DNA of 64,000 nucleotides from Chrysemys picta bellii (taxonomy: Eukaryota): NCBI RefSeq assembly GCF_011386835.1, contig NC_088807.1:23870001-23934000 (forward strand). Reading direction: 5' to 3'. Shown one piece after another: positions 7,480 to 60,500 of this stretch. Below the pieces are notes generated by a model. That model was not told the origin of the DNA. It was given only the letters and a program-made list of their open reading frames with translations, and ran no database searches. Position 1 is the first letter of the stretch. Each line of letters begins with the position of its first letter. A program made the position numbers and the translations under genes.

Positions 7480-7700
7480 AGCGGGTTCCGCCCCTCCATG
7501 GGAGCGGATTGGTGGGAAGGAGACAGACAGGCAGTTCAGCCCAGCCAATGAAGCCTCGAGTAGGAGCATGGCGGGAAGGGCTCTAATCTATTTCCCCCCT
7601 CCCTGGAACTACAGCTCCCAGCATGCAGTGCTTCCACTTCATTCCAAGCACCCGGCTTCCTTCCTTCCTCCCGGTGCGTGATGGGACTCGTAGTCCCTCC
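7480..7700. promoter_or_regulatory. Promoter-like element upstream of PRR12 with two ZNF143/THAP11-type sites and CCAAT boxes
   Basis: ACTACAGCTCCCAGCATGCAGTGC at 7608-7631; reverse-strand ACTACGAGTCCCATCACGCACCG near 7675-7697; GATTGG and CCAAT boxes at about 7507-7548; GC box TTCCGCCC. Confidence 0.6.
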
Positions 7701-9201: not shown

Positions 9202-23373
<14,172 letters not shown>

Positions 23374-26342: not shown

Positions 26343-29295
26343 TCACAGAATGCAGCAGGGGCAGCCATTGGACTCTTAGTTGGGGGGTGCACAGTAGGAG
26401 CAAGGGGGGGTCTCCAGCTCCTGGAACCTCCTGCAAGAAAGAAGGGGGGAGACACTTATGAACGGAGCCCAAACTGGGGGCGGTGCCCCTTCTGGGGTAC
26501 TGGGAGGGGAAGTGCTGTTTTGGGGGTATCCCTGAGGGAGTCAAACCCCATGTTACCACAATGGGGGACATGCCCCATTGGGGGGGGGCTGATGGTTCCC
26601 CAGGCAATTCACTGAGAGTTAAGGGGGGGCGTCAGGGGGGACTGAAGCCCTGTTTGGAGGGATCTCACAGGAAGTTTGGTAGGAATCTACCCCCATGGCG
26701 GGGGGACAACCCTTGGGGGAAATATCACGCACAGTGTGGGTCTCCCTGGCGAGACATCCTGCAGCGCGCACTCCCCTATTTTATGGGGTGCCTTGGTCAG
26801 AGCCGCCCCCCCATACCTGATGGCTCGGACGACCTCATGGAAGGACTCGTCTACGTTGAGGCGGATCTTGGCCGAGGCTTCCATGTAGGGATGCGATTCT
26901 CCTGGGCGAAGGCCAGCGCCTCCTCCTTGGGCACCTGGAGGGGGAGGATTACAAGCAGATCCTCAATCCATTCGACTGGTGGGAGCGGGGGACAAGCTGG
27001 GCACCTCTCAAAGCCCCAGGGCAGTCGGGGGACCCAGGCATCCGGGCTTCAGAAAGCCCATGCCATGAGAGACAGCAGCATTTCCTGTCTGGAGCACCCT
27101 CCAAGATGGCCGCCGACAGCGCGAGTGGCCCATGGGGCGGTACTTCCTGTCTGGGCACCGTTCAAGATGGCCGCCGACAGAGCGCGAGTGGCCCATGGGG
27201 CGGTACTTCCTGTCTGGGCACCCTCCACCAGATGGCTGCCGACAGAGCACGAGTGGCCCATGGGGCGGTACTTCCTGTCTGGGCACCCTCCAAGATGGCC
27301 GCTGACACAGCACGAGTGGCCCACGGGTCAGCACATCCTGTCTGGGCACCGTCCAAGATGGCCGCCGACAGCGCGAGTGGTCCATGGGGCGGCACTTCCT
27401 GTCTGGGGCACCGTCCAAGATGGCCGCCGACAGAGCGCGAGTGGTCCATGGGGCGGCACTTCCTGTCTGGGCACCGTCCAAGATGGCCACCGACAGAGCG
27501 CGAGTGGCCCATGGGGCGGCACTTCCTGTCTGGGTACCCTCCAAGATGGCCCACCATGGCTCGAGCCCAGTGGCCCTGGGGCCCCATCAGGACACCCCAG
27601 CGTGGGCGGAGCCCAGAGACCCCTCTGGCCCCGCCCCCTCTCACCTGGCGCTGCAGGTCCAGGTCGGCCTTGTTGCCCACGAGGATCATGGGAAAGTCGT
27701 CCCGGTCTTTGACCCGCAGGATCTGGGTGTGGAACTTGCTGATCTCGGTGAAGCTGCAGGGGGACGAGATGGAGAGCGGATGGGGGGGGGCTGCTGGAGG
27801 GGGGGGTCCTCGCCGGTGGGAGGGGCCCAGGAGGGTGTGATTGGGCAGCAGGGATCTGAGGGTGGGGGGCTGTCCTGGCCAGGCCGCCGGGGTAGAGGTG
27901 GGGGGGATCTCATGGGCGGGGTACAGGGTGGCTGCCGTAGTGGGGGGGGGGGTCTCAGTGTCGGGGGGGGCCTTACCTGCCGCGGTCATTGATGGCGTAG
28001 ATGAGCAGGAACCCCTCCCCCGTCCGCATGTACTGCTCCCGCATGGCCCCGAACTCCTCCTGCCCGGCCGTGTCCAGGACTGTGGGGGAGAGATGGAGGG
28101 CGGCGGGGGGGTTAACTTTCCCACATCCTGAGGGTCAGGGCTCCTATCCCTCCTGTCCCCTAGCTGGGGAGAGAACCCAGGAGTCCTGGCTCCAGCCCCC
28201 CCCTGCTCTAACCACTAGATCCCACTCCCCTCCCAGAGCCAGGGAGAGAACCCAGGAGTCCTGTCTCCCAGCTCCTCCCCCCTGTTGCCCACCCATAGAA
28301 CTTCCTCCCACCTCTGCAGCCTCCCCCATAGCAGGGCAGGTGGGTCCCTGGGTGAGGCCCCTCTGCTCTAGCTGGGGCAGGGCTCCCCCGAAGTGGGGCG
28401 CAAGCCAGCCCCTCCTCCCCCCCCCCCCCCCGCGACACACTCACTGTCCAGCCGGGTCGCGGTCCCATCGATGGTGCAAAATCTTCGTATAGGAGTCCTC
28501 GATTGTGGGGTCATAGTCCGAGACAAAGTACGACTGGGGGAGGGGGAAGGGGGGGGTTACAGCCCCTATTAGAACCCAGGCGTCCGGGATCTTCTCCCCC
28601 CCCCCCCCCCGGCTATGACCACTGGACCCTACTGAGCTCTGAGAGCTGTGGAGAGAACCCAGGAGTCCTGGCTGCCAGCCCCCCCCCCCCGCTCTAACCA
28701 CTAGCCCCCTCTCCCTCCCAGAGCCAGGGACAGAACCCAGGAGTCCGGGCTCCCAGCCCCCCCCCCCCATCCAGTTCTTGAGAAGAGAAGATTTGGTGGA
28801 ACGTGGAACAAGCGGCTGCTCCTGCCCCCCCCCTCCGCCGCCGCCCCCCCCATCCCCCCCAGGCCTGTCCCGGGCAGCGGGAGGGGTGGGGCGGCTCCCT
28901 CGCTCCAGGCCCCAAATTCCTGCTGCGCTCCCCCGGGCGGCGGGGGAGGGAGAGGAAATAGGAATTTCCTCCCCCCCCCCCGCTCCCTGCCCTCCCCAGA
29001 CGCGCTCCCCCCTCGCAGGCCGGGCACCCCCACCTCTAGGCCACCCCCGTCCCCCCACTCAGCCCCCCCTCCTGCCCCCCTGAGCCAGGACCCCCCACAG
29101 CCTGAACTTTTCCAGGGAGGAAACTTTGCCGCCCCGGAAAGGGGGGGGGGTCCCGGCGGGGGGCCCCCCATGCCGCCCCGGGGCCCCCCTTACCTGAATG
29201 AACTGGATGGTCAGGGCGCTCTTCCCCACGCCGCCCCCTCCCACCACCACTAGCTTGTATTTCTCCTGGGGCGCCCCCGGCTCTTTGGGGGCCAT
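26343..29295 (-). CDS. RRAS: Ras-related protein R-Ras
   Basis: Exons (-) 29295-29194 ([34 protein letters not shown]), 28533-28445 ([17 protein letters not shown]), 28079-27977 ([23 protein letters not shown]), 27753-27645 ([11 protein letters not shown]), 26934-26817 ([12 protein letters not shown]), 26430-26343 (ends NGCPCCIL*, a CAAX box). Synteny with PRR12 and SCAF1. As assembled there is +1 nt in exon 2, -1 nt in exon 5 and an in-frame TAA in exon 6. Confidence 0.92.
27075..27555. repeat. ~62-bp tandem repeat carrying YY1 (CAAGATGGCCGCC) and ETS (ACTTCCTG) motifs, RRAS intron 4
   Basis: 8 copies of the AGATGGC core counted, at about 27104, 27165, 27230, 27293, 27357, 27418, 27481 and 27544. 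Confidence 0.88.
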
Positions 29296-31539: not shown

Positions 31540-32430
31540 ATGACCTCAGGGTGTGACATCACAAGGGGGTGGTGCAAAGGTGTGAGGATCGGTGCAAAGT
31601 CACAAGATATGTTGTTGACATCGTGATGATGTCACGGGGTGAGGTCACAGTGTGATGATCTCATAAAACCAAGCCCCTATGGGCATGTACCATGGTGGGC
31701 GGATGTCACTGTGAGATGATGTCATAATGTTGGGGATGCCATCACACTAGGGTCTTGGGAGGATGATGTCCTAGTGTGGCAAGGGGGGGGTGATGACATT
31801 CGGGGGCGGAGTCCCAGCGGATGATGTCATGGAGTGGGGGGTGACATCACAGGAGTGTCTCGGGAAGATGATGTCGCAGTGGGCGGGGGGGGCAATGACA
31901 TGAGGAGATGGAATCCCAGGGGATGATGTCATGGAGTGGGGGGTGACATCACAGCAGTGTCTCGGGAAGATGATGTCATAGTTGGCAGGGGGGTGATGAC
32001 ATTAGGGGGCGGAGTCCCAGGGGATGATGTCATGGAGTGGGGGGGTGACATCACAGGAGTGTCTCGGGAAGATGATGTTGCAGTGGGCAGGGGGGTGATG
32101 ACATGAGGAGGTGGAATCCCAGGGAATGATGTCATGGAGTGGGGGGGTGACATCACAGCAGTATCTCAGGAAGATGATGTCATAGTTGGTGGGGGGGCGA
32201 TGACATGAGGAGGTGGAATCCCAGGGGATGATGTCATGGAGTGGGGGGTGACATCACAGCAGTATCTCGGGAAGATGATGTCGCAGTGGGCGGGGGGGTG
32301 ATGACATCAGGGGGCGGAGACCCAGGGGATGATGTGACCACGGATGACGCAATGGTGGGATGGGATGACATCACAACAGTGCCTTGGGGATGATGTCACA
32401 GCGCTGTGCCATGGCAATGTGACGTCACGA
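31540..32430. repeat. ~102-bp tandem repeat and flanks rich in TGACATCA/TGATGTCA
   Basis: Five full units at about 31820-32330; 18 TGACATCA octamers counted on either strand; a perfect TGACGTCA at 32420-32427. Confidence 0.85.
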
Positions 32431-32992
32431 CGCTACAATGACGTCGCGGTTCGACACGGACTCTCGGACGCCACAACCGCTAAAACTACCACTCCCATGA
32501 AGCACCGGGCGCTCCCGCAAGGCATGGTGGGATCGGTTCCCCCGCCGCCGCTCAGCCCCGTCTCTCCCAGGCTGCCCCGCGGCAGGGCGGCGCGGAGCTC
32601 TCTGGGACACGTAGTCCCGCCCCGCGGGGAGCGGGCGGGGGAGGGGAAGCGCCCGGCGCGGCGGGCGGCCGCGGAGCATGATGGGAAAGGCAGGCGCCGG
32701 GCCCCTGAGTCATGGTGGGGGGATCCGGACTACACCTCCCGGCATGCCCCGCGCGGCGGGGGCGCGGCCTGGGCGGCGGGCGGGCCGCGGGGCATGCCGG
32801 GAGCGGTAGTTCCCCTCCCCCTCCCGCCAGGGGCGGCGGACTCCATCTCCCATCGGCCCCCGCGGCGCCGCAGCGGCCGAGCCGGAGCCGGAGCCGAGCG
32901 GGGAGCGGGGTAAGATGGCGGCGGCCGCGGCGGCCGGGCCGGGGCAGCGGCGCCCATTGTCCTAGGGGAGGGGCCGGGCCCCGCGCGCGCAG
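32430..32992 (+). promoter_or_regulatory. SCAF1 CpG-island promoter and non-coding exon 1
   Basis: CpG island with three ZNF143/THAP11-type motifs (reverse GGACTACGTGTCCCAGAG near 32600-32618; ACTACACCTCCCGGCATGCCCCGC near 32729; its inverted partner near 32787-32810), YY1 motif AAGATGGCGGC at 32912 and donor CAG|GTAACC at 32992/32993. Confidence 0.75.
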
Positions 32993-35000: not shown

Positions 35001-36522
35001 GTGCGGTGTGGGGGAGAGGGGTTGTATGTTTGTATGGGGGTAGTGGTGGATATAGTTGGGATGGAAAGGGAGTGCAGTGTCGGGGGAGGGGGTTATATAT
35101 GTGGGGGTGGATATAGCATGGGAGTGGGAAGGGGAGAAGGTTGTAGGGGGGCCTTGGGGGTGGTTGTGGATATAGCATGGGAAAGGGAAGGGGGCAGCGG
35201 GGGGGAGGGGTTATGTGGGGGTATGTAAGGGGTGCAGTGTAGGTGGAGAGGAGGGGGTACAGTGTGGGGGAGGATGTTATAGGGAGCATGGTGGTTGTGG
35301 ATACAGCATGGGGGCAGGAAGGGGAGGGGATTATATGGGGCCTTGGATGTGGGGGTGGATATAGCAAGGGAATGGGAAGGGGGGCAGTGTGGGGGGGTGG
35401 GAAGGAGAGGGGGTGTGCTGTAGGTGGAGACGACGAGACACTGTGTGGGAGAGGGGCTGTGGGGGCCTTGGGGGTTGTGGGTACAGCGTGGGATGTAGAA
35501 AGGGGATGGAGTGCAGCATAGGGGAGGAGATTATAGGGGGCATGGGTGGGGGCAGGAAGGAGGTGTGGGGGGAGGGGTTATATGGGGGGTGGATACAACA
35601 TGGGGGGCAGGATGGGATGGGATAGGGGGTTCCAAGCAGGGGCTGTGGAGGTGAAGGGGTTAATGTGGGACCAGCCAGGGTGGGGGTGTGACAAGGGGGG
35701 GCTGGGGTTAATGGGGCGGGGGGGAGATGAACCTAGGGATGGGGATTGGAGGCCAATGGGGGAAGGAGAAGGAAGACGGGATAATGGGGCGGCTAATGAT
35801 GGGGTCATTAATCTGGGGGAGGGGAGTGGGGGGCTGGAGGAGATGAGGGAGGAAGGAGGGACAGGGCTAAGGGAGTGGGTGCGGGTTGGAAAGGGAGGGG
35901 AATTGCTGGGGTGGCTGGGAAGCGGGGGTGATGGTCTGCCCCCCTCTCCGGGCAGGGGAATGAAGCCACGCCCTCCCCCACACCCTAGGGCAGGCTGCTG
36001 AGTTGAGCTGGTGCACAAAGGCCAGTGGCTGTCTCTGTCCGTCCCCCCCACGCCTCTCACTCAGCCACACAGCAAAGGGGGGGGGGGGCCATGATGGGGC
36101 GCCCAGGTCAGAGGGGACCCTGTGGCTCTATTTTCCCTGTTGAGCTCACAGCTTCAGCCCGTACTGGGGCAGAGACATGTCCTGGCATGGGGGAGAAACG
36201 GGCCCTTTCCTCTCTGGGGGGCGCTGCCCTAATCTGGGGCTACGGGTTGGGATTGAAGAGGTGGTGCTTGGCTGTAGGATGGATGCCCCTAGCCCGGATA
36301 AGCTCTTCTGCCGTTAGAAGAGGACCCAAGGGCAGCATTGGGAGGAGCTGGGAGCCAGGACTCCTGAGTTCTCTCCCTGGCTCTGGGAGGGGAGTGGGGT
36401 CTAGTGGTTAGAGCAGGGGGGCTGGGAGCCAAGCTGGGCACAGTGGCTGCATTGCTGGTGGTGGTGGTAGCCCATGACCTCGCTCACCTTCCCTGTTCGT
36501 AGGATCCTCTCCGCCCGCGGCC

Positions 36523-39500
36523 ATGGAAGAGGAGGAGAATCCACCTCCCCCGGCACCAGAGGATCCAGTGGGGGGCAGTGAGGAGCAGGGGCGGCCAAGC
36601 GATGCCCCCCCGGACAGGGAGCCGCGTCAGCCGGGTGCTCTGTGCACTGGACAAGTCATCGTGCTGGTAAGATCCATGGCTCTGTGCTGCCCACCCAGTT
36701 CCAGGGGCCTGGCATGGTGCAGCCGCATCTGGGGGACACAACTGTTGCTGGATGGGATGTGGTGGGGGAACTATGGGTCCCAGCATGCTCTGCTGCCTCG
36801 CGCTCAGTGTGTGGGGCCTGGAAACTGCGGGTCCCAGCATGCACTGCTCCCTCGCCCTCAGTGTGTGGGGCCTGGGAACTGCGGGTCCCAGCATGCACTG
36901 CTCTCTCGCGCTCAGTGTGTGGGGCCTGGGAACTATGGGTCCCAGCATGCACTGCTCCCTCGCCCTCAGTGTGTGGGGCCTGGGAACTGCGGGTCCCAGC
37001 ATGCACTGCTCTCTCGCGCTCAGTGTGTGGGGCCTGGGAACTGCGGGTCCCAGCATGCACTGCTCTCTCGCGCTCAGTGTGTGGGGCCTGGGAACTGCGG
37101 GTCCCAGCATGCACTGCTCTCTCGCGCTCAGTGTGTGGGGCCTGGGAACTGCGGGTCCCAGCATGCACTGCTCCCTCGCGCTCAGTGTGTGGGGCCTGGG
37201 GACTGCGGGTCCCAGCATGCACTGCTCCCTCGCGCTCAGTGTGTGGGGCCTGGGAACTGCGGGTCCCAGCATGCACTGCTCCCTCGCCCTCAGTGTGTGG
37301 GGCCTGGGAAATGTGGGTCCCAGCATGCACTGCTCCCTCGCGCTCAGTGTGTGGGGCCTGGGAACTACTGGTCCCAGCATGCACTGCTCCCTCGCCCTCA
37401 GTGTGTGGGGACTATGGGTCCCAGCATCTACTGCTCCCTTGTACTCAGTGTCTGGAAGGCCCTGGGGACTGCAGATCCCAGCATGCACTGCTCCCTCGCC
37501 CTCAGTGTGTGGGGCCTGGGAACTACGGGTCCCAGCATGCACTGCTCCGCTCCACTTCTGCTGAGGTGGGGTCCCATTTTGGGGTGATCCTGGTACCTCC
37601 CTTTGCGCTGGGCGTTCCTTGCCTGGGGCGCCTCCAGTGGGTGGAGGCTGGGCCAGGGGACAGCCCGTCCGGTGTTCCCAGCCCAGCTTGGGACGCGCTT
37701 TGGGGGTTGGCTGGAGAGCCCCGGCTAACCGACCCCCTCTCTCAGCAGAAGGCCTTGCAGCAGGTGGTGAGCGGCAGCTTCCAGAGCGAGCGGCCGGGCC
37801 AGGCTGGCGAGAAAGGTATGGACCAGGACACGGCGGGGTGGGGGCCCGGGGACAACCAACCTCGCAGCCGGGGATCGGGTCCAGCCCTGAATCTGGGACA
37901 CCCAGCCTCTGCCCCCTTTGTGAGCCAGACCTAATGGCTTCCCCATCTGCACCCCCGGGGTATGGGACAGGGGCACCCCCGGCCACGGGCCCGAGAGCAG
38001 CGGGGCCGACCCTCTGTCCCTGTTGCAGATGCGGAGAGGAAGAAGATGAGCCGGAAGAAATGGTGCCGGAACCCCCGGGCGGTTGGATCTGGCAGTGGCA
38101 AGGGGGGCACCGGGGACCCCATGGGCACATGTGACCGGAGCAGCACCGTGAGTGACCCTGATCAGCCTGAACCCCCAGCACGTGGGAACTAGGGGCGCCA
38201 GCCGCCCTTGTGCTCAGTGTGCCAGCCGCTGGGAACTGTGGGTCCCAGCATGCACTGCTCCCTCAGCTCCATGTGTGTATATCCGGGTCCCAGCATGCAC
38301 TGCTCCCTCAGCTCCGTGCACCCAGCATGCACTGCTCCCTCAGCTCCATGTGTGCGAATCCGGGTCCCAGCATGCACTGCTCCCTCAGCTCCATGCACCC
38401 AGCATGCACTGCTCCCTCAGCTCCATGTGTGTGGATCCGGGTCCCAACATGCACTGCTCCCTCAGCTCCATGCCTCCGAATCCAGGTCCCAGCATGCACT
38501 GCGCCCTCAGCTCCATGCACCCAGCATGCACTGCTCCCTCAGCTCCATGTGTGCGAATCCGGGTCCCAGCATGCACTGCTCCCTCAGCTCCATGCACCCA
38601 GCATGCACTGCTCCCTCAGCTCCATGTGTGTGGATCCGGGTCCCAACATGCACTGCTCCCTCAGCTCCATGCCTCCGAATCCAGGTCCCAGCATGCACTG
38701 CGCCCTCAGCTCCATGCACCCAGCATGCACTGCTCCCTCAGCTCCATGTGTGCGAATCCGGGTCCCAGCATGCACTGCTCCCTCAGCTCCATGCACCCAG
38801 CATGCACTGCTCCCTCAGCTCCATGCGTGCGGATCCAGGTCCCAGCATGCACTGCTCCCTCAGCTCCATGCGTGTGGATCCGGGTCCCAGCATGCACTGC
38901 TCCCTCAGCTCCATGCGTGCGGATCCGGGTCCCAGCATGCACTGCTCCCTCAGCTCCATGCGTGCGGATCCAGGTCCCAGCATGCACTGCTCCCTCAGCT
39001 CCATGCGTGCGGATCCAGGTCCCAGCATGCACTGCTCCCTCAGCTCCATGCGTGCGGATCCAGCTCCCAGCATGCACTGCTCCCTCAGCTCCATGCGTGT
39101 GGAGACAGGTCCCAGCATGCACTGCTCCTTCAGCTCCCTGTCTGCGAATCCAGCTCCCAGCATGCACTGCTCCCTCAGCTCCATGCGTGTGGAGACAGGT
39201 CCCAGCATGCACTGCTCCTTCAGCTCCCTGTCTGCGAATCCAGCTCCCAGCATGCACTGCTCCCTCAGCTCCATGTCTGCGAATCCAGCTCCCAGCATGC
39301 ACTGCTCCCTCAGCTCCGTGCACCCAGCATGCACTGCTCCCTCAGCTCCATGCCTGTGGATCCGGGTCCCAGCATGCACTGCGCCCTCAGCTCCATGCGT
39401 GCGGATCCAGGTCCCAGCATGCACTGCGCCCTCAGCTCCATGCGTGCGGATCCAGGTCCCAGCATGCCCTGCTCCTTCAGCTCCATGTGTGCGAATCCAG

Positions 39501-42500
39501 GTCCCAGCATGCACTGCTCCCTCAGCTCCATGTCTGCGAATCCAGGTCCCAGCATGCACTGCTCCCTCAGCTCCATGCGTGTGGAGACAGGTCCCAGCAT
39601 GCACTGCTCCCTCAGCGCCATGCGTGTGGAGACAGGTCCCAGCATGCACTGCGCCCTCAGCTCCATGCACCCAGCATGCACTGCTCCCTCAGCTCCATGC
39701 GTGTGGAGACAGGTCCCAGCATGCACTGCTCCCTCAGCGCCATGCGTGTGGAGACAGGTCCCAGCATGCACTGCGCCCTCAGCTCCATGCACCCAGCATG
39801 CACTGCTCCCTCAGCTCCATGCGTGTGGAGACAGGTCCCAGCATGCACTGCTCCTTCAGCTCCCTGTCTGCGAATCCAGCTCCCAGCATGCACTGCTCCC
39901 TCAGCTCCATGTCTGCGAATCCAGGTCCCAGCATGCACTGCTCCCTTAGCTCCATGTCTGCGAATCCAGCTCTCAGCATGCACTGCTCCCTCAGCTCCAT
40001 GCGTGTGGAGACAGGTCCCAGCATGCACTGCTCCCTCAGCTCCATGTCTGCGAATCCAGGTCCCAGCATGCACTGCTCCCTCAGCTCCATGTCTGCGAAT
40101 CCAGGTCCCAGCATGCACTGCTCCCTTAGCTCCATGTGTGCGAATCCAGCTCCCAGCATGCACTGCTCCCTCAGCTCCATGCACCCAGCATGCACTGCTC
40201 CCTCAGCTCCATGCGTGTGGAGACAGGTCCCAGCATGCACTGCTCCCTGAGCTCCCTGTCTGCGAATCCAGCTCCCAGCATGCACTGCTCCCTCAGCTCC
40301 ATGTCTGCGAATCCAGCTCCCAGCATGCACTGCTCCCTCAGCTCCATGCGTGTGGAGACAGGTCCCAGCATGCACTGCTCCCTCAGCTCCCTGTCTGTGG
40401 ATCCGGGTCCCAGCATGCACTGCTCCCTCAGCTCCATGCCTGTGGATCCGGGTCCCAGCATGCACTGCTCCCTCAGCTCCATGCCTGTGAATCCAGCTCC
40501 CAGCATGCACTGCTCCCTCAGCTCCATGCCTGCGAATCCAGGTCCCAGCATGCACTGCTCCCTCAGCTCCATGCGTGTGGATCCGGGTCCCAGCATGCAC
40601 TGCTCTTTCCCATCCCAGTGGTGGGGTGCTGTGCATGCTGGGAGCCATGGCCTGGGAAGCCGCTGCAAAGGGGCAACCCTGGGGGCTGTGGTGGGGGAGA
40701 GGGGGCGCCCCCCGCTGGCCCTGCCCAACCTCTGTCATCTTCTCCCCAGGTCCCCGAGGCCCTGGGCCTGTTCTCCGGCCTGGCGGGGGCCCTGCAGTTC
40801 CTGCAGAGGTCGTGTGCCGCCTCCATGCAGACCCGGCTCCTCCTGGGAGACGAGGGGCTCCTGGGGCCCCCGGGCATCTGGTAAGGGCAGGTCCCCTGCA
40901 CCCCAGCTGGGGGGGACATCTGAGGAATGGGGTCACAGCGGGGGAGCTGGGATCCCGGACTCCTGGGTTCCATCCCTGGCTGTGGGAGGGGAGTGGGGGG
41001 CTCGTGGTTGGAGAAAGGGACTGTCAGAGGGGCTAAGGCGTGGGGGTGGGGGGCCGAGGTCTCTCTCTGGTGTGTGACCGGAATGGGGAGGGGTTGTGGA
41101 TGACATGAATTTGCTGGTCTCAGCAGAGGCCCAGTCACGTTACAGAGCCCCATAAGGGGAGGGGCCCCCCCCCAGCCCTCAGGGCGGTGTGCAAAGCCCC
41201 CCTCCAGCTTTGACCGGCCTCTCCTCCTCCTGGCAGCGGGGACACGGAGCCGGACGAGGTGGAGCTGGTGGCCGAGGTGCGGCTGGGGGACGTGGCTGCT
41301 GCGTCCGGCATCTTCAGGAGAGAGCGGGCCTGGAGAGTGCACAAATCAGGTAGGGACGGGGGTGGGGAGGACAGGCCATGGGGCCTGTCCCCTCTAGGAG
41401 GCGCTGGCTCCCACCCGGCCCCAGGGCGGGGACTGGCTGGCTCAGGGGGTCGGGGAATGGGGCACGGGGCCTGTCCCCTCTAGGAGGCGCCATCTCCCAC
41501 CCGGCCCCAGGGCGGGGACTGGCTGGCTCTGGGGGACAGGGAACAGGACATGGGGCCTGTCCCCTCTAGGGGGCGCCGGCTCCCACCCGGCCCCAGGGCG
41601 GGGACTGGCTGGCTCTGGGGGACAGGGAACAGGACATGGGGCCTGTCCCCTCTAGGGGGCGCCGTCTCCCATCCAACCCCAGGGCGGGGACTGGCTGGCT
41701 CTGGGGGACAGGGAACAGGACATGGGGCCTGTCCCCTCCAGGAGGCGCCGTCTCCCATCCAACCCCAGGGCGGGGACTGGCTGGCTCCGGGGGGCAGGGA
41801 ATGGGACATGGGGCCTGTCCCCTCTAGGAGCATGCGAGATGATTGGTGGTGGTGGGGGGGGGGGTACCAGGCTGGTCCCATTGCCACCCCCATCCCTCCT
41901 CTTTGCATTTCCCTGCAGTCTCCCTGCCCAGCCCCTCGGCCCTGCGCTGGAGAGGAGCCGGCAGCCTCCCCGTTGCCCTGGCCCCGCCTTCCGGCCCCCT
42001 GGACCTTAAGTGGCCACACAGGACTCGTGGGGGCGCAGCCCCGCTCCCCGGCACGGGCAGGACTCGGCGCGTCCCCGGCCGCTGGGCGGTGGCCCTGGGC
42101 ACCGGCACGGGGGTCTCCAACGGGCAGCAGCGGCCCCAGGCCCCAGCAGGCAGGGACCCGGAGGCCCAGCGCTCCCAGCCGCCCCCCGCCAGCGCCCTGG
42201 AAAAGGCCGATTCCAGCTCGTCTTCCTCCTCGTCCTGCTCCTCCTCGTCGTCATCCTCCTCCTCCCAGCAGGCGGCGCCCCCCGGGGGCGGGGACAGCAA
42301 CCTCTGCCCCCTGCGCTCGCCAGACTTGGATATTTATGATCCCTTCCACCCCACGGACGAGGACAACCCCGGTGGAGACTTCGGCTACGCGGCCTCGCCC
42401 GGCAAGCAGCAGGACCAGAAATACGACCCCTTCGACCCCACTGGGTCCAACCCCAGCTCCTCCCGCAGCAGCCCCTCCCCCGACGAGGAGGAGGAAGACG

Positions 42501-45500
42501 AGGAGGAGGAAGACGAGGACGACGCGGCCGCCCCCCGGCCCGACATGTCCCACAGCATCAGCCGCATCTCGGAGACCCTGGCCGGCATTTACGACGAGAA
42601 CAGCTTGAGTCAGGACTTCCCCAGCTCGGAGAAGGGGCGGGAAGAGGCGGAGCCCAGCGAGGCCCCGGTGGCCGGTGGCCGGCGCCCTGAAAAGGAACCG
42701 GCGGCTGGGGCCGACTCCACCCTGCCTGAGGAGGAGAATGCCTCGGAGCAATCGGACGGGGCCCCCGAGCCGCCCCCAGAGCCGCGTCGCCGCGTCTTTG
42801 TGGTGGACCTCGCCAGCAAGAGCCGCTCGGAGGCAGAGGCCAACCCCAAGCTGGAGGGGAAGGTGTCGCTGGAGGTGGTGACGGCCGGAAACCCCAAGGC
42901 GCCGGCACGGGGGGAGAAGGGCCCCAAGGCGGGCCGGCACCGGGGCGGGCGGCGCTCCTCTCTGGACTGGGCCGGTGCCGACTCGGAGATCGAGGAAGGT
43001 GAGATCGTGCAGCCGGAGGACGAACGCTACAGCCCCATCCGTCTCTTCCGCAGCCGGTGCCGGCCGGCTGAGCAGCGCCCCCTGCGGGTGGCGGAGGGGG
43101 ACGACTTCCTGTCTCTCCACGCCGACTCGGACGAGGAGGGGGACTTCGGCGAGAGCCAGCCTGAGCCCCGGTGGAAGGCGGCTGCCGACCTGCGGCGCAA
43201 GATCCTGACGCAGCGCCGTGAGCGGTACCGCCACGACTCCCCCAAGCACTCGGGCTCCAGCTCCGGCTCCCGCAAGAAGGCCAAGCGTTCCCGCGAGCGC
43301 CGGCCCCCCAAGGCCAAGGAGCCCCGCGCTGGCCCTTGGCCCCCCAAGAAGAAATCCAAGTCGCGCTCGAAGTCCAAGGAACGTCGGCGCTCCCGGTCCC
43401 GCCGGCGCGGCTCCCGCTCTCGGTCCCGCCGGCGCGGCTCCCGCTCCTGGTCGCCCTCCCTCAGCACCGGCCTGTCAGCCATGGGCTCGGAGCGGCACCG
43501 GCGGTCGCGGGAGAGGCGGCGGGGCCGACGCTCGCGCTCAGGGAGCCGGGCGCGGCACAAGGAGAAGCACCGGGACGGCGGCAGCGGCAAGAAGAAGAAG
43601 AAGCAACAGCGCTCCCGTTCCCGGGAGAAGCGGCCGCCCCGCGACAAGCAGCGCGAGGTGCACGTCCTGGAGGAGCCCAAGGCAGAGGAGCGCCGGCGGG
43701 ACGCCCGCACCGTCGTGCCGCCCTCCATCCAGGACCTCAACGACACCGACCTGTTCACCATCAAGAGGACCATCACGGTCAGCCGGCAGGACGGCTCCCC
43801 GGAGCCAGCCAAGCGGGAGGTGCTCTACGACTCGGAGGGGCTGAGCTTCGAGGGCTGCTTCTCAGACCGCGAGCCCGCTGAGGGGCCCCGGCACCTGGGC
43901 GGCAAGGGCGAAGGGGGGCCGCCCCGCAAGGAGCGGCTGGAGGAGGAGGCCAAGCCGCCCAAGGAGAAGGAGCGGAAGCGGGGGTACCCGGAGGAGCGCC
44001 CCGCGCCCCGCGAGAAGTCCAAGAAGAGGTTCAAGGAGGCGCCGGGCCGGTCGGCGCCCGAGGCGGGCAAGGCGGAGAAGGAGAAGTCGCGGCCGGAGCG
44101 GGAGAAGCCCCCCCGGAAAGCCAAGGCTGGGCACAAGGACAGCAGCAAGGCGGGCAGCTCGGGCCGCAAGGTCAAGCTGCAGTCCAAGGTGGCGGTGCTG
44201 ATCCGCGAGGGCGTCAGCAGCACCACGGTCTCCGGCAAGGAAGGGGGCTCCATCGGCATCAAATTCAGCCGGGACAAGGAGAGCCGCTCGCCCTTCCTCA
44301 AGCCGGAGGAGAAGGGGCCCGGGGCCGACGCCAAGGCGGAGCCGGCCAAGGAGCCGGGCGTGAAGGCCAAGAAGGTCAAGGGGCTGAAGGCCAAGGCAGG
44401 GCTGAAGAAGGCCAAGGGGCCGGGGGCCAAGACCAAGGGGCCCTCGGAGGCCAAGAAGAAGAAGAAGATGAAAGCCAAGACGGGGCTGAAGAAGTCAAAG
44501 GCGGATAGCTGCAGCCAGGGGGCCGGGAGCCCGCCCGCTCCCGCCCCAGAGCCGACGGGGGGCTCCGGCTCCCCACTCAGCCCCCCGCCCAAGCCGCCGC
44601 CCGCCCCGGCCGAACAGGAACTGACCCCCGACTCGCAGACGGTGGACAGCAGCTGCAAGACGCCCGACGTCTCCTTCCTGCCCGAGGAGGCGGCCGTGCC
44701 TGTGCCCGGCGAGCAGCAGAGGACGCCGGCGGGCGAGCCCCAGGCCGACAGCCTCTCCGAGCCCAAGGAGGAGCCCGCCCGCGCCCCGCCCCCGGCCCCC
44801 ATGGCCTGGAACTTGCAGGGGGGTGTGGACTGCACCACGAGCGGCGTCCTGGCACGTAGGTGACGGGGAGAGGGGTGCTCCCAGGGGGCTGGCTGGGTTG
44901 TGGGGGGCGGAGGGGGAGCTCCCGGCCGGGATGGGGGAGGCAGGGCATGGGGGTTGGGTCCCCCAGTGCATGGGGGGTCGTGGGGGAAGCAGTGGGGTGA
45001 GGGCCACCCCAGCTCTGACACCCCCCTCCCCCCCCCGCCGTCTCTCACCCAGTGACCGCCCTGCTCTTCAAGATGGAGGAAGCCAACCTCGCGAGCCGGG
45101 CCAAGGCCCATGAACTGATCCAGGCCACCAACCAGGTAGGGGGCGCTCTCCCCGGCCGGCAGGGCTGGGCCCGGTGCCCCCGTGTGACGCTATGGGGCGC
45201 TGTGCTGCAGGGAGCGGGGCAGGGCAGTAGGGGGCGCTGTGCTGCAGGGAGTGGGGCAGGACAGTAGGGGGCACTCTCCCCGGCCGGCGGGGCTGGGCCC
45301 GGTGCCCCTGTGTGATGCTAGGGGGCGCTGTGCTGCAGGGAGTGGGGCGGGGCTCAATAAGGGGTGCTCTCCCCGGCCATGTCATGACACCAATTTGCTC
45401 ACTGAGCCGAAAGTTGGCCTGGGAACCCCGGCGTCCTGGCTGAAGGCCCACATGGGGGATTGTCTGCTCCCAATCCCTGTCTACCCAGCCCCCCCGCTCT

Positions 45501-46520
45501 CCCCCCCCAGAGAGGCCCCGTCTCCACATTGGGCAAGGGGACCCCAGCTACCCAGCCCCCCCGGAGGGGCCGCATCCTAGCACCGGGCGAGGGGTCCCTG
45601 GCTGCCCCACCCCAGTGCTGGGGCCCCCGGCTGAGACTAATCACCTTCTCTCCCCCTAGATCCTGAGTCACACCAAACCCTCCACGTCCTTGGCGGGCTC
45701 CCAGGCGCCCGCGCCGCCCCCCACCCACACGGCCGCCCCTTACCTGCTGCACAGCTCCCTGCCCCTGGTGGGCTGCAGCTCCACCCCCCCGACCCCCACC
45801 GGGCTGCCTGGCCCCCTCGGCCCGGGCTCGGCGGGCGCTGGCAGCGGGACGCTCTTCGGCACCGGCTCCGGCAGCGACCTGGGCAAGCGGGACGGGAGCA
45901 CCAGCTCCGACGGGCGCGGGGACACGGATAAGGTTAGTGTGTGTGTGGGGGGATGTTTGAGCACTGAGGAGGGGGCCAAGGCTGGGCAGGGTCCCACCAT
46001 GCCCTGGGGAGGTCGTGAGCTTGGCAGCAATGGTGGTGGTGGTGGGGGGGGGGGGTCTGTCCCAGGCTGTGAGATGGGGGGGCCCCTCCCCGGTGTGCTG
46101 ACCCCTGCTCCCCCCCCCCCCAGTACCTGAAGAAGCTGCACACGCAGGAGCGGGCGGTGGAGGAGGTGAAGCTGGCCATCAAGCCCTACTACCAGAAGAA
46201 GGAGATCACCAAGGAGGAATACAAGGACATCCTGCGCAAAGCCGTGCACAAGGTGGGGCGGCGGGGCACCGGCGGGGCTGGGGGCCTGAGGCTTGGTGCC
46301 CCCCACCCTCACTGACGCCCGTTGTGTCGTGTCCCCCCCCCAGATCTGCCACAGCAGGAGCGGGGAAATCAACCCGGTGAAGGTGAACAACCTGGTACGG
46401 GCGTACGTTCAGCGTTACAAGTACTTCCGGAAACACGGCCGCCGCATGGAGGAGGAGCCGGGGGGCCCCAAGGACCTGGGGGGGCTGGACAAGGCCTCGC
46501 TACCCATGCCCCCCCTCTGA
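36523..46520 (+). CDS. SCAF1: SR-related CTD-associated factor 1 (SR-A1), about 1390 aa, apparently intact
   Basis: Coding exons 36523-36666, 37749-37815 (NAGNAG alternative start 37746), 38029-38147, 40750-40880, 41237-41349, 41919-44855, 45053-45135, 45660-45932, 46124-46252, 46344-46520; 4173 nt, in frame. Conserved blocks [21 protein letters not shown], an RS domain, [38 protein letters not shown] and the C-terminal [47 protein letters not shown] domain. Confidence 0.94.
36765..37550 (+). repeat. 54-bp tandem repeat containing ACT(G/A)CGGGTCCCAGCATGCACTGC, SCAF1 intron 2
   Basis: 12 in-register copies (18-codon period in ORF 36523..37587) plus 2-3 degenerate ones. Confidence 0.92.
38235..40610 (+). 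repeat. 45-bp/32-bp tandem repeat containing CCCAGCATGCACTGC, SCAF1 intron 4
   Basis: About 55 copies, estimated from length divided by unit size; higher-order blocks are visible (for example a ~199-bp repeat at 38310-38800). Confidence 0.93.
41375..41830 (+). repeat. 86-bp tandem repeat carrying a CTCF-like motif (CCTCTAGGGGGCGC), SCAF1 intron 6
   Basis: Motif copies start at 41391, 41477, 41563, 41649, 41735 and (truncated) 41821. Related monomers lie near 3640-3740, 13465-13580, 36195-36230 and 54040-54710. Confidence 0.85.
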
Positions 46521-56519: not shown

Positions 56520-57270
56520 GGAGGGGGAAGCAGTGGCGGGGAGGGGTGCCAGCGGGGGGACGGGGGAGGGGGAGCAGCGGGGGGGGTGGAAAGGGGAGGG
56601 GGTGCCAGCGGGGGGACGGGGGAGGGGGGTGCCAGCGGGGGGGGGGAGGGGGAGCAGCGGGGGGGTGGTGGAAAGGGGAGGGGGTGCCAGCGGGGGACGG
56701 GGGAGGGGGTGCCAGCGGGGGGGGGGAGGGGGAGCAGCGGGGGGGTGGTGGAAAGGGGAGGGGGTGCCAGCGGGGGGACGGGGAGGGGGAGCAGCGGGGG
56801 GGGTGGAAAGGGGAGGGGGTGCCAGCGGGGGAGCAGGGGAGGGGGAGCAGCGGGAAGTGATGGAAAGGGGAGGGGGTGCCAGCGGGGGAGCAGGGGAGGG
56901 GGAGCAGCGGGGGGTGATGGAAAGGGGAGGGGGTGCCAGCGGGGGGACGGGGGAGGGGGAGCAGCGGGGGGGGTGGAAAGGGGAGGGGGTGCCAGCGGGG
57001 GGACGGGGGAGGGGGAGCAGCGGGGGGGTGATGGAAAGGGGAGGGGGTGCCAGCGGGGGAGCAGGGGAGGGGGAGCAGCGGGGGGTGATGGAAAGGGGAG
57101 GGGGTGCCAGCGGGGGGACGGGGAGGGGGAACAGCGGGGGGGGGTGGAAAGGGGAGGGGGTGCCAGCGGGGGGACGGGGGAGGGGGAGCAGCGGGGGGGG
57201 GTGGTGGAAAGGGGAGGGGGTGCCAGCGGGGGGACGGGGGAGCAGCGGGGGCGTGATGGAAAGGGGAGGG
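56520..57270 (+). repeat. G-rich minisatellite (GGGGGTGGTGGAAAGGGGAGGGGGTGCCAGCGGGG) upstream of the BCL2L12 start exon
   Basis: Visible tandem repetition of a ~45-55-bp unit. Confidence 0.9.
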
Positions 57271-57516
57271 GTAAGTGGGGGGGAGGGTTGAGTGACACGC
57301 CTGCCCCCCCCCCATAGGTGTGATCCGGGGTGGCCTTGAACATGGGTTCTGCGAATCGCAGCGTCACCCCCCCCCCGCGGCACCCTGCCCCCCCCCTTCC
57401 CGCAGCTGGGCAGGGAGTCGCCCGGTTTGTGCACAGGTTGTGTCGGGGGGCTGGACAGAGATTCCCCCCCTTCGCCCTGTGTCTGATCCCCCCTCTTCCC
57501 CCCCCCAGGCAGGGCC

Positions 57517-60500
57517 ATGGCGGGGCCCCCCCAGCAGCGCCGCCGGCTGCAGGAGGAGACGCGGCTGGTGCTGGAGGCCTTCCTGCGGGGGCTCTGGGCC
57601 GGCGGCCCCCCCTGGGGCACGTGGGGGGCAGCTACCATGACCCCCACTGCTACGCGCACAGGTAAGGGGGGCGGGGCTCACCCCCCTGGGCGCATGCAGG
57701 GAAGGGGGGGCAGAGCTTATGGAGTCGTCCCCCCCCCCAGGAGGGGGGCAGCGGTGGAGGGGGGGAATGTGCAGGTTGGGGGGTGTTAGCCAGGGAAAGG
57801 GGCATGTGGGTGAGGGGAGGAATGGGGGAGAGGTTGCCTGTGGGTGCCCCAGGGATGGGGGGGGTCTGCAGGTGTGTGTGTGGGGTGGGATATGCAGGAG
57901 GGGAGATGGGGGTGGGGGGTGTCTGGGTGCAGGGGGGGATATGCGGGAAAGGGTGGAGGGCTGGGAGGGGGGGTATACAGGGCGGGGGGATATGCACAGG
58001 TGGGGGGATGGGGATATACGTGGCAGGGGGATATGCAGGTGTGGGGGGGCAGGGGGAGGGGGGAATATGCAGGTGTGGGGGGGCAGGGGGAGGGGGGAAT
58101 ATACAGGGCGGGGGACATGCAGGAGTGGGAGGATGGGGGAGAGGGGATATACTGGGGGAGGAGGGGACATGCATTCTGGGGAAGAGCTCCCTGCCCCCCG
58201 ACTCTCCCTGCAGGCACTCTGCGGAGCCGGGGGGGGGCTGGACCCCCCCTGCACGAGAAGATCAACCGGGCGGAGGAGCACAAGCACGGCTTTAAGACCA
58301 GCATGAAGCGGCTGCTACAGCGACGTACCAGCCCCCGCCGGGACCCCCCCGGCCCCCCGCCCCCCAGGGCAGAGCCCCACGAAGGGCCGAAGGAGGGGGG
58401 GGAGGAGCGCCCCAAGCGCGGCCGGGGGTTTCCCTTCAAGGGCGTGCTGCGGAGGAAGGGCCCCTCCCGGGAGGAGACAGAGCCCCCGCCTCGCCCCTCC
58501 GCACCCCCCAACTCCCTGCCAGTCACCCCCTGCTACTGCACGGACACCCTGAGCGCACAGCCAGACTCCCCGCCTCTGGGTAAGAGACCCACGGGGCCGG
58601 GAGAGAACCCAGGCGTCCGGGCTCCCAGCCCCTCCCCCCTGCTCTAAACTATACACCCCCGTCCCCTCCCATTGCCAGGGAGAGAACCCAGGCGTCCGGG
58701 CTCCCAGCCCCTCCCCCCTGCTCTAAACTATACACCCCCGTCCCCCCCCATTGCCAGGGAGAGAACCCAGGCGTCCGGGCTCCCCCCTGCCCTGACCCCA
58801 GCTCTCTCCGCAGGCCGGGCGGCCGAGGACCCGGAGTTCTACACCCGCGTGGCCCGGAAGCTGGACCGGCTGGTGAAGAAACAGCGGAGCGGCGCCAGCA
58901 GCCCCAGCGGGGTCCGGTCCCCTGGGGTCGTGGCCGGGCCCCTCAGCCCAGAGCCGGGCCCCGGGCCCCCAGGTGAGCAGGGGCCTTGGTCCTCCCCCCC
59001 ACCCCCCGGGGGCAGCTCTGGGTCACAGGCCTGTGTCTCTCCCCCAGCCCCCCCGGAGCCGGCCAGCGAGACGCACAAGGAGCAGGTCATCCAGAGACTG
59101 GTGGCGCTGCTGGAGGAGCAAGCCGGGGTCATCAACGACGAGGTGCCGACCCGGTGCCCCCTCTCCCACCCCGCAGCCCCTCCGGCCCTGCCCCCTCCAA
59201 CCCCGCCGGTGCCCCCGCTCCCGCCCCGCAGCCCAGCCCTGCCCTGCCGCCTCCAACCCCGCCGGTGCCCCCTCTCCCGCCCCGCAGCCCCTCCAGTGTC
59301 CCTCACTCCCGCTCGCCCGGCCCTGCCCCCTCCAGCCCCGCCGGTGCCCCCCCTCCCGCCCCGCAGCCCAGCCCTGCCCTGCCCCCTCCAACCCCGCCGG
59401 TGCCCCGCTCCCGCCCCGCAGCCCCTGCGCGCCCGGCACTGCCCCCTCCAGCCCTGCCGGTGCCCCCGCTCCCGCCCCGCAGCCCAGCCCGGCCCTGCCC
59501 CCTCCAGCCCCGCCGGTGCCCCCGCTCCCGCCCCGCAGCCCCCGCTCGCCCGGCCCTGCCCCCTCCAACCCCGCCAGTGCCCCCTCTCCCGCCCCGCAGC
59601 CCAGCCCGGCCCTGCCCCCTCCAGCCCTGCCGGTGCTCCTCACTCCCGCCCCGCAGCCCAGCCCTGCCCTGCCCCCTCCAACCCCGCCAGTGCCCCCACT
59701 CCCGCCCCGCAGCCCCCGCTCGCCCGGCACTGCCCCCTCCAGCCCTGCCGGTGCCCCCACTCCCGCCCCGCAGCCCCTCCAGCCCTGCCCTGCCCCCTCC
59801 AGCCCCGCCGGTGCCCCCACTCCCGCCCCGCAGCCCTCGCTCGCCTGGCACTGCCCCCTCCAGCCCTGCCGGTGCCCCCGCTCCCGCCCCGCAGCCCCCG
59901 CTCGCCCGGCCCTGCCCCCTCCAGCCCCGCCGGTGCCCCCTCGCCCGCCCCGCAGCCCCCGCTCGCCTGGCACTGCCCCCTCCAACCCCGCCGGTGCCCC
60001 TCTCCCGCCCCGCAGCCCCCGCTCGCCCGGCCCTGCCCCTCCAGCCCCGCCGGTGCCCCCTCTCCCGCCCCGCAGCCCCCGCTCGCCCGGCCCTGCCCCT
60101 CCAAGCCCCGCCGGTGCCCCCGCTCCCGCCCCGCAGCCCCTGCGCGCCCGGCCCTGGTGACCCCCCCAGCCCCGCCGGTGCCCCCGCTCCCGCCCCGCAG
60201 CCCCTGCGTGCCCGGCCCTGCTGACCCCTCCAGCCCCACCGGTGCCCCCGCTCCCGCCCTGCAGCCCCCTGCCAGCCCTGTCCTGCCCCCCCCCCCAGCC
60301 CCGCCGGTGCCCCTCACTCCCGCCCCGCAGCCCCTCCAGTGTCCCTCACTCCCGTTCGCCCAGCACTGCCCCCTCCAGCCCCGCCGGTGCCCCCTCTCCC
60401 GCCCCGCAGCCCCCTGCCAGCCCTGTCCTGCCCCCCCCCAGCCCCGCCGGTGCCCCCTCTCCCGCCCCGCAGCCCCCTGCCAGCCCTGCCCTGGTGACCC

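What the first reader, a model, noticed from the sequence alone, without database searches (positions are those of the whole stretch)
36765..40610. About 70 tandem ZNF143/Staf-type binding sites in two SCAF1 introns
Seen: two different tandem units (54 bp in intron 2; 45/32 bp in intron 4) share one invariant core, CCCAGCATGCACTGC. In the 54-bp unit the core is preceded by ACTGCGGG, ACTATGGG or ACTACGGG at exactly the spacing of the ACTACAAT-TCCCA composite. A single near-identical site (ACTACAGCTCCCAGCATGCAGTGC) sits in the promoter-like element at 7608, and related sites are in the SCAF1 promoter. Established: TCCCA-N2-ATGC(A/C)YYGC is the ZNF143/Staf motif, and the ACTACA extension marks THAP11/HCFC1 co-bound sites, normally one to a few per promoter. 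Inference: a promoter element was amplified into a kilobase-scale binding array that could act as a ZNF143 sink, intragenic promoter or enhancer. Alternatively it is a neutral, methylated minisatellite. The same core gives GCAUG (RBFOX-type) in the pre-mRNA.
Basis: partly seen in the sequence, partly recalled or inferred. Interest (0 to 1): 0.72.

Follow-up and report, generated by a model that had tools for sequence, protein, structure and literature searches.

The report
ZNF143-motif minisatellites in SCAF1 introns
Two introns of a turtle SCAF1 gene are mostly tandem repeats whose every unit carries a near-consensus docking site for the transcription factor ZNF143; the repeats are real and striking, but they behave like ordinary unstable, methylated minisatellites, and nothing yet shows that they regulate anything.

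Summary
The 15-base core occurs 72 times in the window against 0.01 expected. Array 1 (54-bp unit, intron 2) has 15 cores, array 2 (45/32-bp units, intron 4) has 56, one lies at 7617, and one inverted copy follows array 2. Sixty-nine units match the published 18-base Staf/ZNF143 consensus with at most two mismatches. RNA contigs from two turtles splice across both arrays, so the intron assignment is right.

- CpG observed/expected is 0.32-0.35 in the arrays and 0.98 in SCAF1's own promoter, which has about seven such sites.
- The THAP11 half (M4) is intact in 4 of 15 units of array 1 and in no unit of array 2.
- A contig from a relative about 3% diverged has 2 cores where the window has 15.
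- The invariant block in array 2 is real (P=0.0006, the most extreme of 19 arrays tested). But it spans 28 bases, 11 beyond the ZNF143 footprint, and P weakens to 0.02 once CpG-prone columns are removed.

Most likely these are near-neutral minisatellites seeded from an intronic ZNF143-type site. In-vivo binding is plausible but untested. Earlier notes of this scan list eight other ZNF143-motif clusters or arrays elsewhere in this genome.

The parts
32480..32990 (+). SCAF1 promoter and 5'UTR exon 1 (the exon ends at 32990). It holds about seven SBS-type sites in both orientations, including a convergent pair of perfect 18/18 matches at 32736(+) and 32786(-).
   Evidence: CpG o/e is 0.98. The loose ends of RNA contigs X15 and X19 before 36501 match 32977-32990.
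36503..36666 (+). SCAF1 exon 2, with the start codon at 36523.
   Evidence: RNA contigs X15 and X19 cover it and leave it by a GT..AG joint. ORF.
36766..37548 (+). Array 1: a 54-bp minisatellite with 14.6 copies and 15 cores, filling 72% of intron 2 (36667-37748). Ten interior units are nearly identical. Old decayed units of 47 and 57 bp lie at 37373-37476.
   Evidence: Exact M4 matches occur only at 36770, 36932, 37411 and 37522. CpG o/e is 0.35.
37749..37815 (+). SCAF1 exon 3. It has a NAGNAG acceptor: X15 uses 37746 and X19 uses 37749.
   Evidence: Joints.
38029..38147 (+). SCAF1 exon 4.
   Evidence: Joints.
38184..38243 (+). Decayed 54-type unit(s) at the 5' edge of array 2. The upstream one has lost its core.
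   Evidence: Local alignment to the 54-bp consensus and reading.
38244..40605 (+). Array 2: 56 cores (45 units of 45 bp, 10 of 32 bp), filling 91% of intron 4 (38148-40749). It has 20 spacer types and higher-order blocks, for example a 199-bp five-unit block repeated 2.4 times.
   Evidence: The invariant block is 28 of 45 columns (P=0.0006). CpG o/e is 0.32.
40627..40644 (-). Inverted SBS-like copy (17/18 match) that faces the last direct core at 40587-40604. The two form a convergent pair and a strong hairpin.
   Evidence: Folded as DNA: -34.2 kcal/mol, z = -4.07.
40750..40880 (+). Start of SCAF1 exon 5.
   Evidence: Joint 38147|40750 in X15 and X19.
41843..44863 (+). Large Ser/Arg-rich open reading frame of the same gene.
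   Evidence: Nearest Atlas cluster is 'splicing factor, arginine/serine-rich 19', a weak match (0.79). The SCAF11-like_C domain PF23030 is found at 46157-46312 (E = 2.3e-7).
7608..7694 (.). Convergent pair of SBS2/M4 sites (7608+ and 7694-) in unique sequence with CCAAT boxes.

Best explanation
These are two ordinary, fast-turning-over intronic minisatellites. They grew by unequal exchange or replication slippage from an intronic ZNF143/Staf-type site. The two unit types are homologous along their whole length, so they share one founder sequence, although their flanks are unrelated. They are transcribed as part of the SCAF1 pre-mRNA and spliced out cleanly. In the germ line they are methylated like the surrounding intron, and their CpGs decay. 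The core survives largely because it has no CpG and because whole units are copied together. As a by-product, the locus offers about 70 same-strand, CpG-free, near-consensus ZNF143 (and ZNF76) sites, which may be occupied wherever the chromatin is open. No regulatory role is shown. Shown here: the anatomy, the motif match, the intron position and splicing, the CpG depletion, the copy-number difference between relatives and the uneven variability. Inferred: the growth mechanism, the methylation state and the near-neutrality.
For: - The window holds more than 25 other minisatellite arrays, so arrays are the local norm.
- CpG o/e is 0.32-0.35 in the arrays, 0.11-0.46 in the neighbouring intron sequence and 0.98 in the true promoter.
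- The high-frequency variants of array 2 include CG/TG and CG/CA alternations at three CpG sites.
- Higher-order blocks and 20 spacer types show repeated segmental amplification.
- The 1161-base contig of organism D, about 3% diverged in the flanks, runs 36404-36827 and then 37526-38269. That leaves 2 cores instead of 15.
- The amplified interior units of array 1 carry ACTGCG, which fails M4; the intact M4 boxes (ACTATG/ACTACG) sit at both edges and at two interior units (36932, 37411).
- The invariant block of array 2 covers the SBS plus 11 further bases. High-frequency variants are 0 of 11 in that extension and 8 of 16 in the spacer (P=0.008). SBS against the rest gives only P=0.06.
- With CpG-prone columns removed, the clustering weakens to P=0.023.
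- Two motif-free arrays show similar clustering, with P about 0.01.
- RNA contigs of two organisms splice normally across both arrays.
- Units do not fold better than shuffles, and Rfam has no match.
Against: - The 24-25 bases shared without a single difference by two arrays whose remaining columns differ at about a third of positions, and the 28-column invariant run in array 2 (P=0.0006, the most extreme of 19 arrays), are more than CpG effects alone explain.
- The conserved part includes all informative positions of a 7-finger factor's motif.
- SCAF1's own promoter is built from the same motif class, so the gene very likely responds to ZNF143.
- Contigs of all four other organisms carry the same core.
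- Earlier notes report other ZNF143-motif arrays in this genome, which could mean the motif favours amplification or retention.
Confidence: 0.6

Rival explanations
1. The arrays are occupied by ZNF143 (or ZNF76) in vivo and act in cis. They could work as an intragenic enhancer or cluster that feeds SCAF1's ZNF143-type promoter 3.8-7.6 kb upstream, as an alternative promoter, or as a local sink. Selection on binding would then keep the core intact.
For: Sixty-nine units match the 18-base consensus at 16-17 of 18 positions, with mismatches only at the ends. The core lacks CpG, so methylation cannot directly block recognition. The core block is significantly less variable than the spacer and is identical between the two arrays. 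The gene's promoter has about seven such sites. The ZNF143 DNA-binding domain binds SBS1 and SBS2 with Kd of about 1.4-1.6 nM, and ChIP score rises with the number of SBS2 motifs (PMC3627581). Array 2 ends in a convergent site pair like those of the two promoters in this window.
Against: The CpG depletion equals that of bulk intron, whereas ZNF143 sites are typically in CpG islands within 2 kb of a start site (PMC3627581). The 3' GCG, which PMC5006282 changed to TAC to alleviate Staf's stimulatory activity, is GCT in all but 6 units. Invariance extends 11 bases beyond the footprint. Copy number is 2 against 15 between close relatives. No RNA joint starts inside an array (contigs only, so this is weak).
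Confidence: 0.25
2. The unit belongs to a dispersed repeat family (a satellite or the internal repeat of a mobile element) that landed independently in introns 2 and 4 and elsewhere. The shared core would then reflect common descent rather than function.
For: The two arrays are homologous along the whole unit, but their flanks are unrelated. Contigs of organisms C, D and E join array-like cores through other spacers, some resembling a shortened 54-bp unit (tables 5c and 7). Earlier notes list other ZNF143-motif arrays in this genome. Human MLT1J retroelements carry SBS2 sites bound by ZNF143 (PMC3627581).
Against: The remaining 60 kb of the window has no further copy of the unit beyond the bare motif. 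There are no terminal inverted repeats or shared flanks. The odd contigs may simply be the other species' versions of these same arrays. This rival concerns origin and is compatible with either functional reading.
Confidence: 0.1
3. The arrays act at the RNA level, either as GCAUG clusters recruiting RBFOX proteins or as arrays of decoy splice sites that tune inclusion of the small exons 3 and 4.
For: There are 15 and 55 copies of GCATG on the sense strand of introns 2 and 4. Intron 4 has 47 acceptor-like and 23 CAGGT donor-like strings. The arrays flank two short exons.
Against: The high-affinity hexamer TGCATG occurs 0-1 times. RNA contigs of two organisms show only the normal joints, with exons 3 and 4 included. 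The only variation seen is a NAGNAG acceptor unrelated to the arrays.
Confidence: 0.05

Closest known systems
Staf/ZNF143 binding sites SBS1 and SBS2 of vertebrate promoters (PMC3627581, PMC5006282)
   Same: The informative positions are the same (TCCCA, two free bases, ATGC, A, two pyrimidines, GC). In a few units of array 1 the ACTAYR box sits at the canonical distance. The same motif class builds SCAF1's own promoter in this window.
   Different: Known sites occur one to a few per promoter, in CpG islands within about 2 kb of a start site, and usually end in GCG. Here about 70 copies lie in CpG-poor introns 3.8-7.6 kb downstream, mostly end in GCT, and mostly lack the THAP11 box.
Minisatellite VNTRs that carry transcription-factor sites, and intronic VNTR enhancers such as the SLC6A4 and DAT1 intron VNTRs cited in PMC8096271
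   Same: Tandem units of tens of bases inside genes, each unit carrying a factor's motif. Copy number is variable and higher-order structure is present.
   Different: Those human cases have expression or reporter data. Here there is none, and the motif is ZNF143, for which I found no described tandem array in three literature searches.
CTCF-binding macrosatellites (DXZ4, PMC3491370) and the CTCF/REST-motif minisatellites noted elsewhere in this genome by this scan
   Same: A repeat whose conserved part is the long motif of a multi-zinc-finger protein, while the rest of the unit evolves quickly.
   Different: DXZ4 units are kilobases long and CTCF binding is demonstrated. The turtle arrays are 45-54-bp units with no binding data.
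MLT1J retroelements carrying SBS2 sites bound by ZNF143 and THAP11 in human cells (PMC3627581)
   Same: ZNF143 motifs multiplied by a repeat mechanism rather than by promoter evolution.
   Different: Those are dispersed retroelement copies, not a local tandem array. No element body or shared flank is seen here.

Membership tests
Staf/ZNF143 binding site (SBS1) | Match to the 18-base consensus YWCCCRNMATSCMYYRCR | tested here: met
   Sixty-nine array units match with at most two mismatches, all at terminal positions. The window total is 85 against 7.7 expected. The consensus is taken from PMC5006282.
Staf/ZNF143 binding site (SBS1) | 3' GCG element (PMC5006282 changed GCG to TAC to alleviate Staf's stimulatory activity) | tested here: inconclusive
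   GCT in most units; GCG in 6 units of array 2. Two of the three bases are kept, and the effect on affinity is unknown.
Staf/ZNF143 binding site (SBS1) | Occupancy by ZNF143 in cells or in vitro | not testable with these tools
   No ChIP, CUT&RUN or EMSA data were available, and the runs laid were contigs only.
Staf/ZNF143 binding site (SBS1) | Promoter and CpG-island context (within about 2 kb of a start site) | tested here: not met
   The arrays lie in introns 2 and 4, 3.8-7.6 kb from exon 1. CpG o/e is 0.32-0.35 against 0.98 at the promoter.
SBS2 / M4 composite (THAP11-HCFC1 with ZNF143) | ACTAYR box two bases before TCCCR (ACTAYRNNNCCCR) | tested here: not met
   Exact matches in only 4 of 15 units of array 1 (36770, 36932, 37411, 37522) and in none of array 2. 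Most interior units read ACTGCG.
Minisatellite / VNTR | Head-to-tail units of about 10-100 bp, with unit variants and higher-order blocks | tested here: met
Minisatellite / VNTR | Copy number varies between individuals or close species | tested here: met
   The contig of organism D spans intron 2 with 698 bp fewer, giving 2 cores against 15. It is a single short-read contig, so a long-read check is desirable.
RBFOX intronic splicing element cluster | Repeated (U)GCAUG hexamers near regulated exons | tested here: not met
   TGCATG occurs 0 times in intron 2 and once in intron 4. Only the pentamer GCATG is repeated, and no alternative exon use appears.
Transposable-element-derived repeat | Shared element body, terminal repeats, or other copies | tested here: inconclusive
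   There are no homologous flanks or inverted termini and no other copy in the window. Odd core-bearing contigs in other runs leave other loci possible.

The most novel reading that the evidence does not exclude
Turtle GC-rich chromosome regions may hold a class of minisatellites whose conserved cores are the long motifs of tightly binding multi-zinc-finger proteins: ZNF143 here and at about eight other noted places, and CTCF, REST and YY1 elsewhere in this genome. Under this reading, occupancy either triggers tandem amplification (fork stalling and template switching at bound sites) or shields the core from mutation. The SCAF1 arrays would be a 70-site ZNF143 platform coupled to a promoter built from the same motif.
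Probability: 0.12. Interest if true: 0.75.

Novelty: new member of a known kind. Interest (0 to 1): 0.36.

Why it matters
[quoted passage not shown] Its length polymorphism would then be a natural dosage series for testing how site number affects ZNF143-dependent transcription. It would also bear on whether bound motifs promote minisatellite growth. If the arrays are not bound, which I think more likely, they are a clean example of a different point. In a genome with dozens of minisatellites per 64 kb, random seeding is expected to amplify a transcription-factor motif now and then, and a CpG-free core can then look 'conserved' without selection. That is a useful caution for the many similar notes in this scan.

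Tried and rejected
- A dispersed copy of the unit elsewhere in the window: only the bare motif is found.
- Segmental duplication or a mobile element explaining the two arrays: flanks do not align above shuffled controls, and there are no inverted termini.
- Direct derivation from the SCAF1 promoter pair or from the 7.6-kb site: nothing aligns beyond the 17-base motif. A 40-base resemblance between the 7608 site and the end of array 1 extends slightly beyond the composite motif and stays unexplained.
- Hairpin-prone units as the cause of slippage: z-scores are -1.2, -0.04 and +0.9.
- Known RNA families: none found.
- RBFOX hexamers: absent.
- Literature on ZNF143 tandem arrays: three searches found none. 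A search for the literal motif strings gave only primers and unrelated sequences.
- Look-up of our earlier findings by sequence came back blank.
- Copy number from contig depth: not attempted beyond bridging contigs, because depth per contig is no copy number.
Gene identity rests on the large exon, the PF23030 hit, the RNA joints and the neighbouring RRAS note.
- The costly protein searches were not used.


Full report
**What is there.**
- Tandem Repeats Finder reports a 54-bp array at 36766-37548 (14.6 copies, 90% matches).
- It also reports a complex array at 38244-40605, built from 45-bp units with 32-bp deletion variants and 77, 135 and 199-bp higher-order periods.
- Splitting at the cores gives 15 cores in array 1 and 56 in array 2 (45 units of 45 bp, 10 of 32 bp, one terminal partial unit).
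- All of these cores lie on the + strand, the sense strand of the gene.
- One inverted copy lies 22 bases after the last direct core. Together they form a strong hairpin as single-stranded DNA (-34 kcal/mol, z = -4.1).

**Gene context.**
- RNA-type contigs from two coded organisms (X15 of B, X19 of E) join 36666 to 37749 (X19) or 37746 (X15, a NAGNAG acceptor), 37815 to 38029, and 38147 to 40750. All joints are GT..AG.
- Their upstream loose ends match 32977-32990, the end of a 5'UTR exon.
- The gene continues into a 1006-codon Ser/Arg-rich frame. Its nearest Atlas cluster is 'splicing factor, arginine/serine-rich 19', a weak match.
- A downstream exon hits the SCAF11-like C-terminal domain (PF23030, E = 2.3e-7).
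The SCAF1 label is thus well supported but not proven by a full-length comparison.

**Motif identity.**
- PMC5006282 gives the Staf site consensus YWCCCRNMATSCMYYRCR and the M4 motif ACTAYRNNNCCCR. PMC3627581 gives tested SBS1 and SBS2 probes.
- Sixty-nine array units match the 18-base consensus with one or two mismatches, always at the outermost positions.
- The 3' GCG is GCT in all but six units. PMC5006282 changed that triplet to TAC to alleviate Staf's stimulatory activity, so this deviation may matter.
- Exact M4 occurs only four times, all in array 1 and including its first and last units. The amplified interior units read ACTGCG.
- Array 2 has no THAP11 box at all. The 'composite' reading therefore applies to a small minority of units.
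- SCAF1's own promoter (32480-32865) holds about seven SBS-type sites, including a convergent pair of perfect matches. The gene very probably is a ZNF143-type gene.

**Origin.**
- The 54-bp and 45-bp consensus units align along their whole length. They share 21 identical bases plus the three before them, then about two-thirds identity and a 9-base length difference.
- The 5' edge of array 2 still carries decayed 54-type units.
- The flanks of the two arrays do not align with each other, with their own opposite flanks in reverse, or with the promoter. No other copy of the unit exists in the remaining 60 kb.
- So there was one founder sequence, but how it reached two introns 700 bp apart is unknown.
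- Contigs of organisms C, D and E that join array-like cores through other spacers may come from other loci or from those species' own versions of these arrays. I could not tell which.

**Neutral or constrained?** Points for neutrality:
- The window has more than 25 other minisatellites.
- The arrays have CpG o/e of 0.32-0.35, like the neighbouring intron and unlike the promoter at 0.98. Their commonest variants include CG/TG/CA alternations.
- Array 2 has 20 spacer types and clear higher-order blocks.
- A 1161-base contig of organism D, about 3% diverged in the flanks, crosses intron 2 with 698 bases fewer, leaving two cores. The window's array contains a 57-bp unit with about 11 changes, many of them CpG transitions. 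That unit is too old to post-date such a recent split, so I infer that D contracted and that the ten near-identical interior units here are a recent expansion.

Points for constraint:
- In array 2 all nine high-frequency variable columns lie in columns 28-44, leaving a 28-column invariant run (P = 0.0006 by permutation). This is the most extreme of 19 arrays tested in this window, although two motif-free arrays reach P of about 0.01.
- The block is not the ZNF143 footprint, however. The 11 bases 3' of the site are equally invariant (0 of 11 against 8 of 16 in the spacer, P = 0.008). Footprint against the rest gives only P = 0.06, and removing CpG-prone columns leaves P = 0.023.

I conclude that the lower variability of the core is real but is only partly explained, either by CpG absence or by ZNF143 selection.

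**Other readings.**
- RNA-level roles are unlikely. The RBFOX hexamer is absent, and splicing across both arrays is normal in two organisms.
- Units have no unusual fold, and Rfam finds nothing.

**Wider pattern.** Earlier notes of this scan (unchecked by me) list eight other ZNF143-motif clusters or arrays in this genome, together with CTCF, REST and YY1 arrays. A rough estimate, which is inference, suggests random seeding can account for this:
- This window has about 30 arrays, so about 1.5 kb of founder sequence, or 2% of the window.
- It has about 10 single-copy SBS-like sites.
- That predicts roughly 0.2 SBS-seeded arrays per such window, more than enough for the handful noted across 732 windows.

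A proper census is needed before invoking a special mechanism.

**Verdict.** The most likely reading (0.6) is a pair of near-neutral, methylated, unstable minisatellites that happen to multiply a strong ZNF143 site. A bound, cis-acting platform remains a fair rival (0.25). This is a new member of a known kind, namely minisatellites carrying factor motifs (PMC8096271), and no ZNF143 tandem array turned up in the literature searches.

Noticed in passing
window 31715-32335: A 102-bp-unit array lies directly upstream of the SCAF1 promoter. Its units carry CRE-like octamers with the CpG decayed (TGATGTCA, TGACATCA). The adjoining unique promoter sequence keeps an intact TGACGTCA at 32420. This looks like a second promoter-type motif amplified at the same gene.
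   Followed up: partly
window 32480-32990: The SCAF1 promoter is built from about seven SBS/SBS2-type sites in both orientations, including a convergent pair of perfect 18/18 matches (32736+, 32786-), plus a YY1-like AAGATGGCGGC near 32913. CpG o/e is 0.98.
   Followed up: partly
window 7608-7694: A convergent pair of exact M4/SBS2 sites with nearby CCAAT boxes lies in unique sequence between two minisatellites. CpG o/e is only 0.30, which is unusual for a ZNF143-type promoter. The gene was not identified.
   Followed up: no
window 13223-13247: Another single SBS2-type site (exact M4 plus a 17/18 SBS match) on the + strand. Its context was not examined.
   Followed up: no
window 37744-37749: SCAF1 exon 3 has a NAGNAG tandem acceptor. 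The RNA contig of organism B uses the upstream AG and that of organism E the downstream AG, a one-codon difference.
   Followed up: partly
window 27078-27551: A 63-bp-unit array has units combining a YY1-like AAGATGGCCGCC and an ETS-like CACTTCCTG. Its variable columns are not clustered (P = 0.85).
   Followed up: partly
window 56538-57271 and 59308-60334: Two G/C-rich minisatellites without any recognised motif also show significantly clustered variable columns (P = 0.014 and 0.009). Conserved boxes inside units are therefore not specific to motif-bearing arrays.
   Followed up: partly
runs X9, X11, X19 laid on window 37390-40496: Contigs in three other organisms join array-like cores through different short spacers, one resembling a shortened 54-bp unit. 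They come either from other loci with the same core or from species-specific unit variants of these arrays.
   Followed up: no
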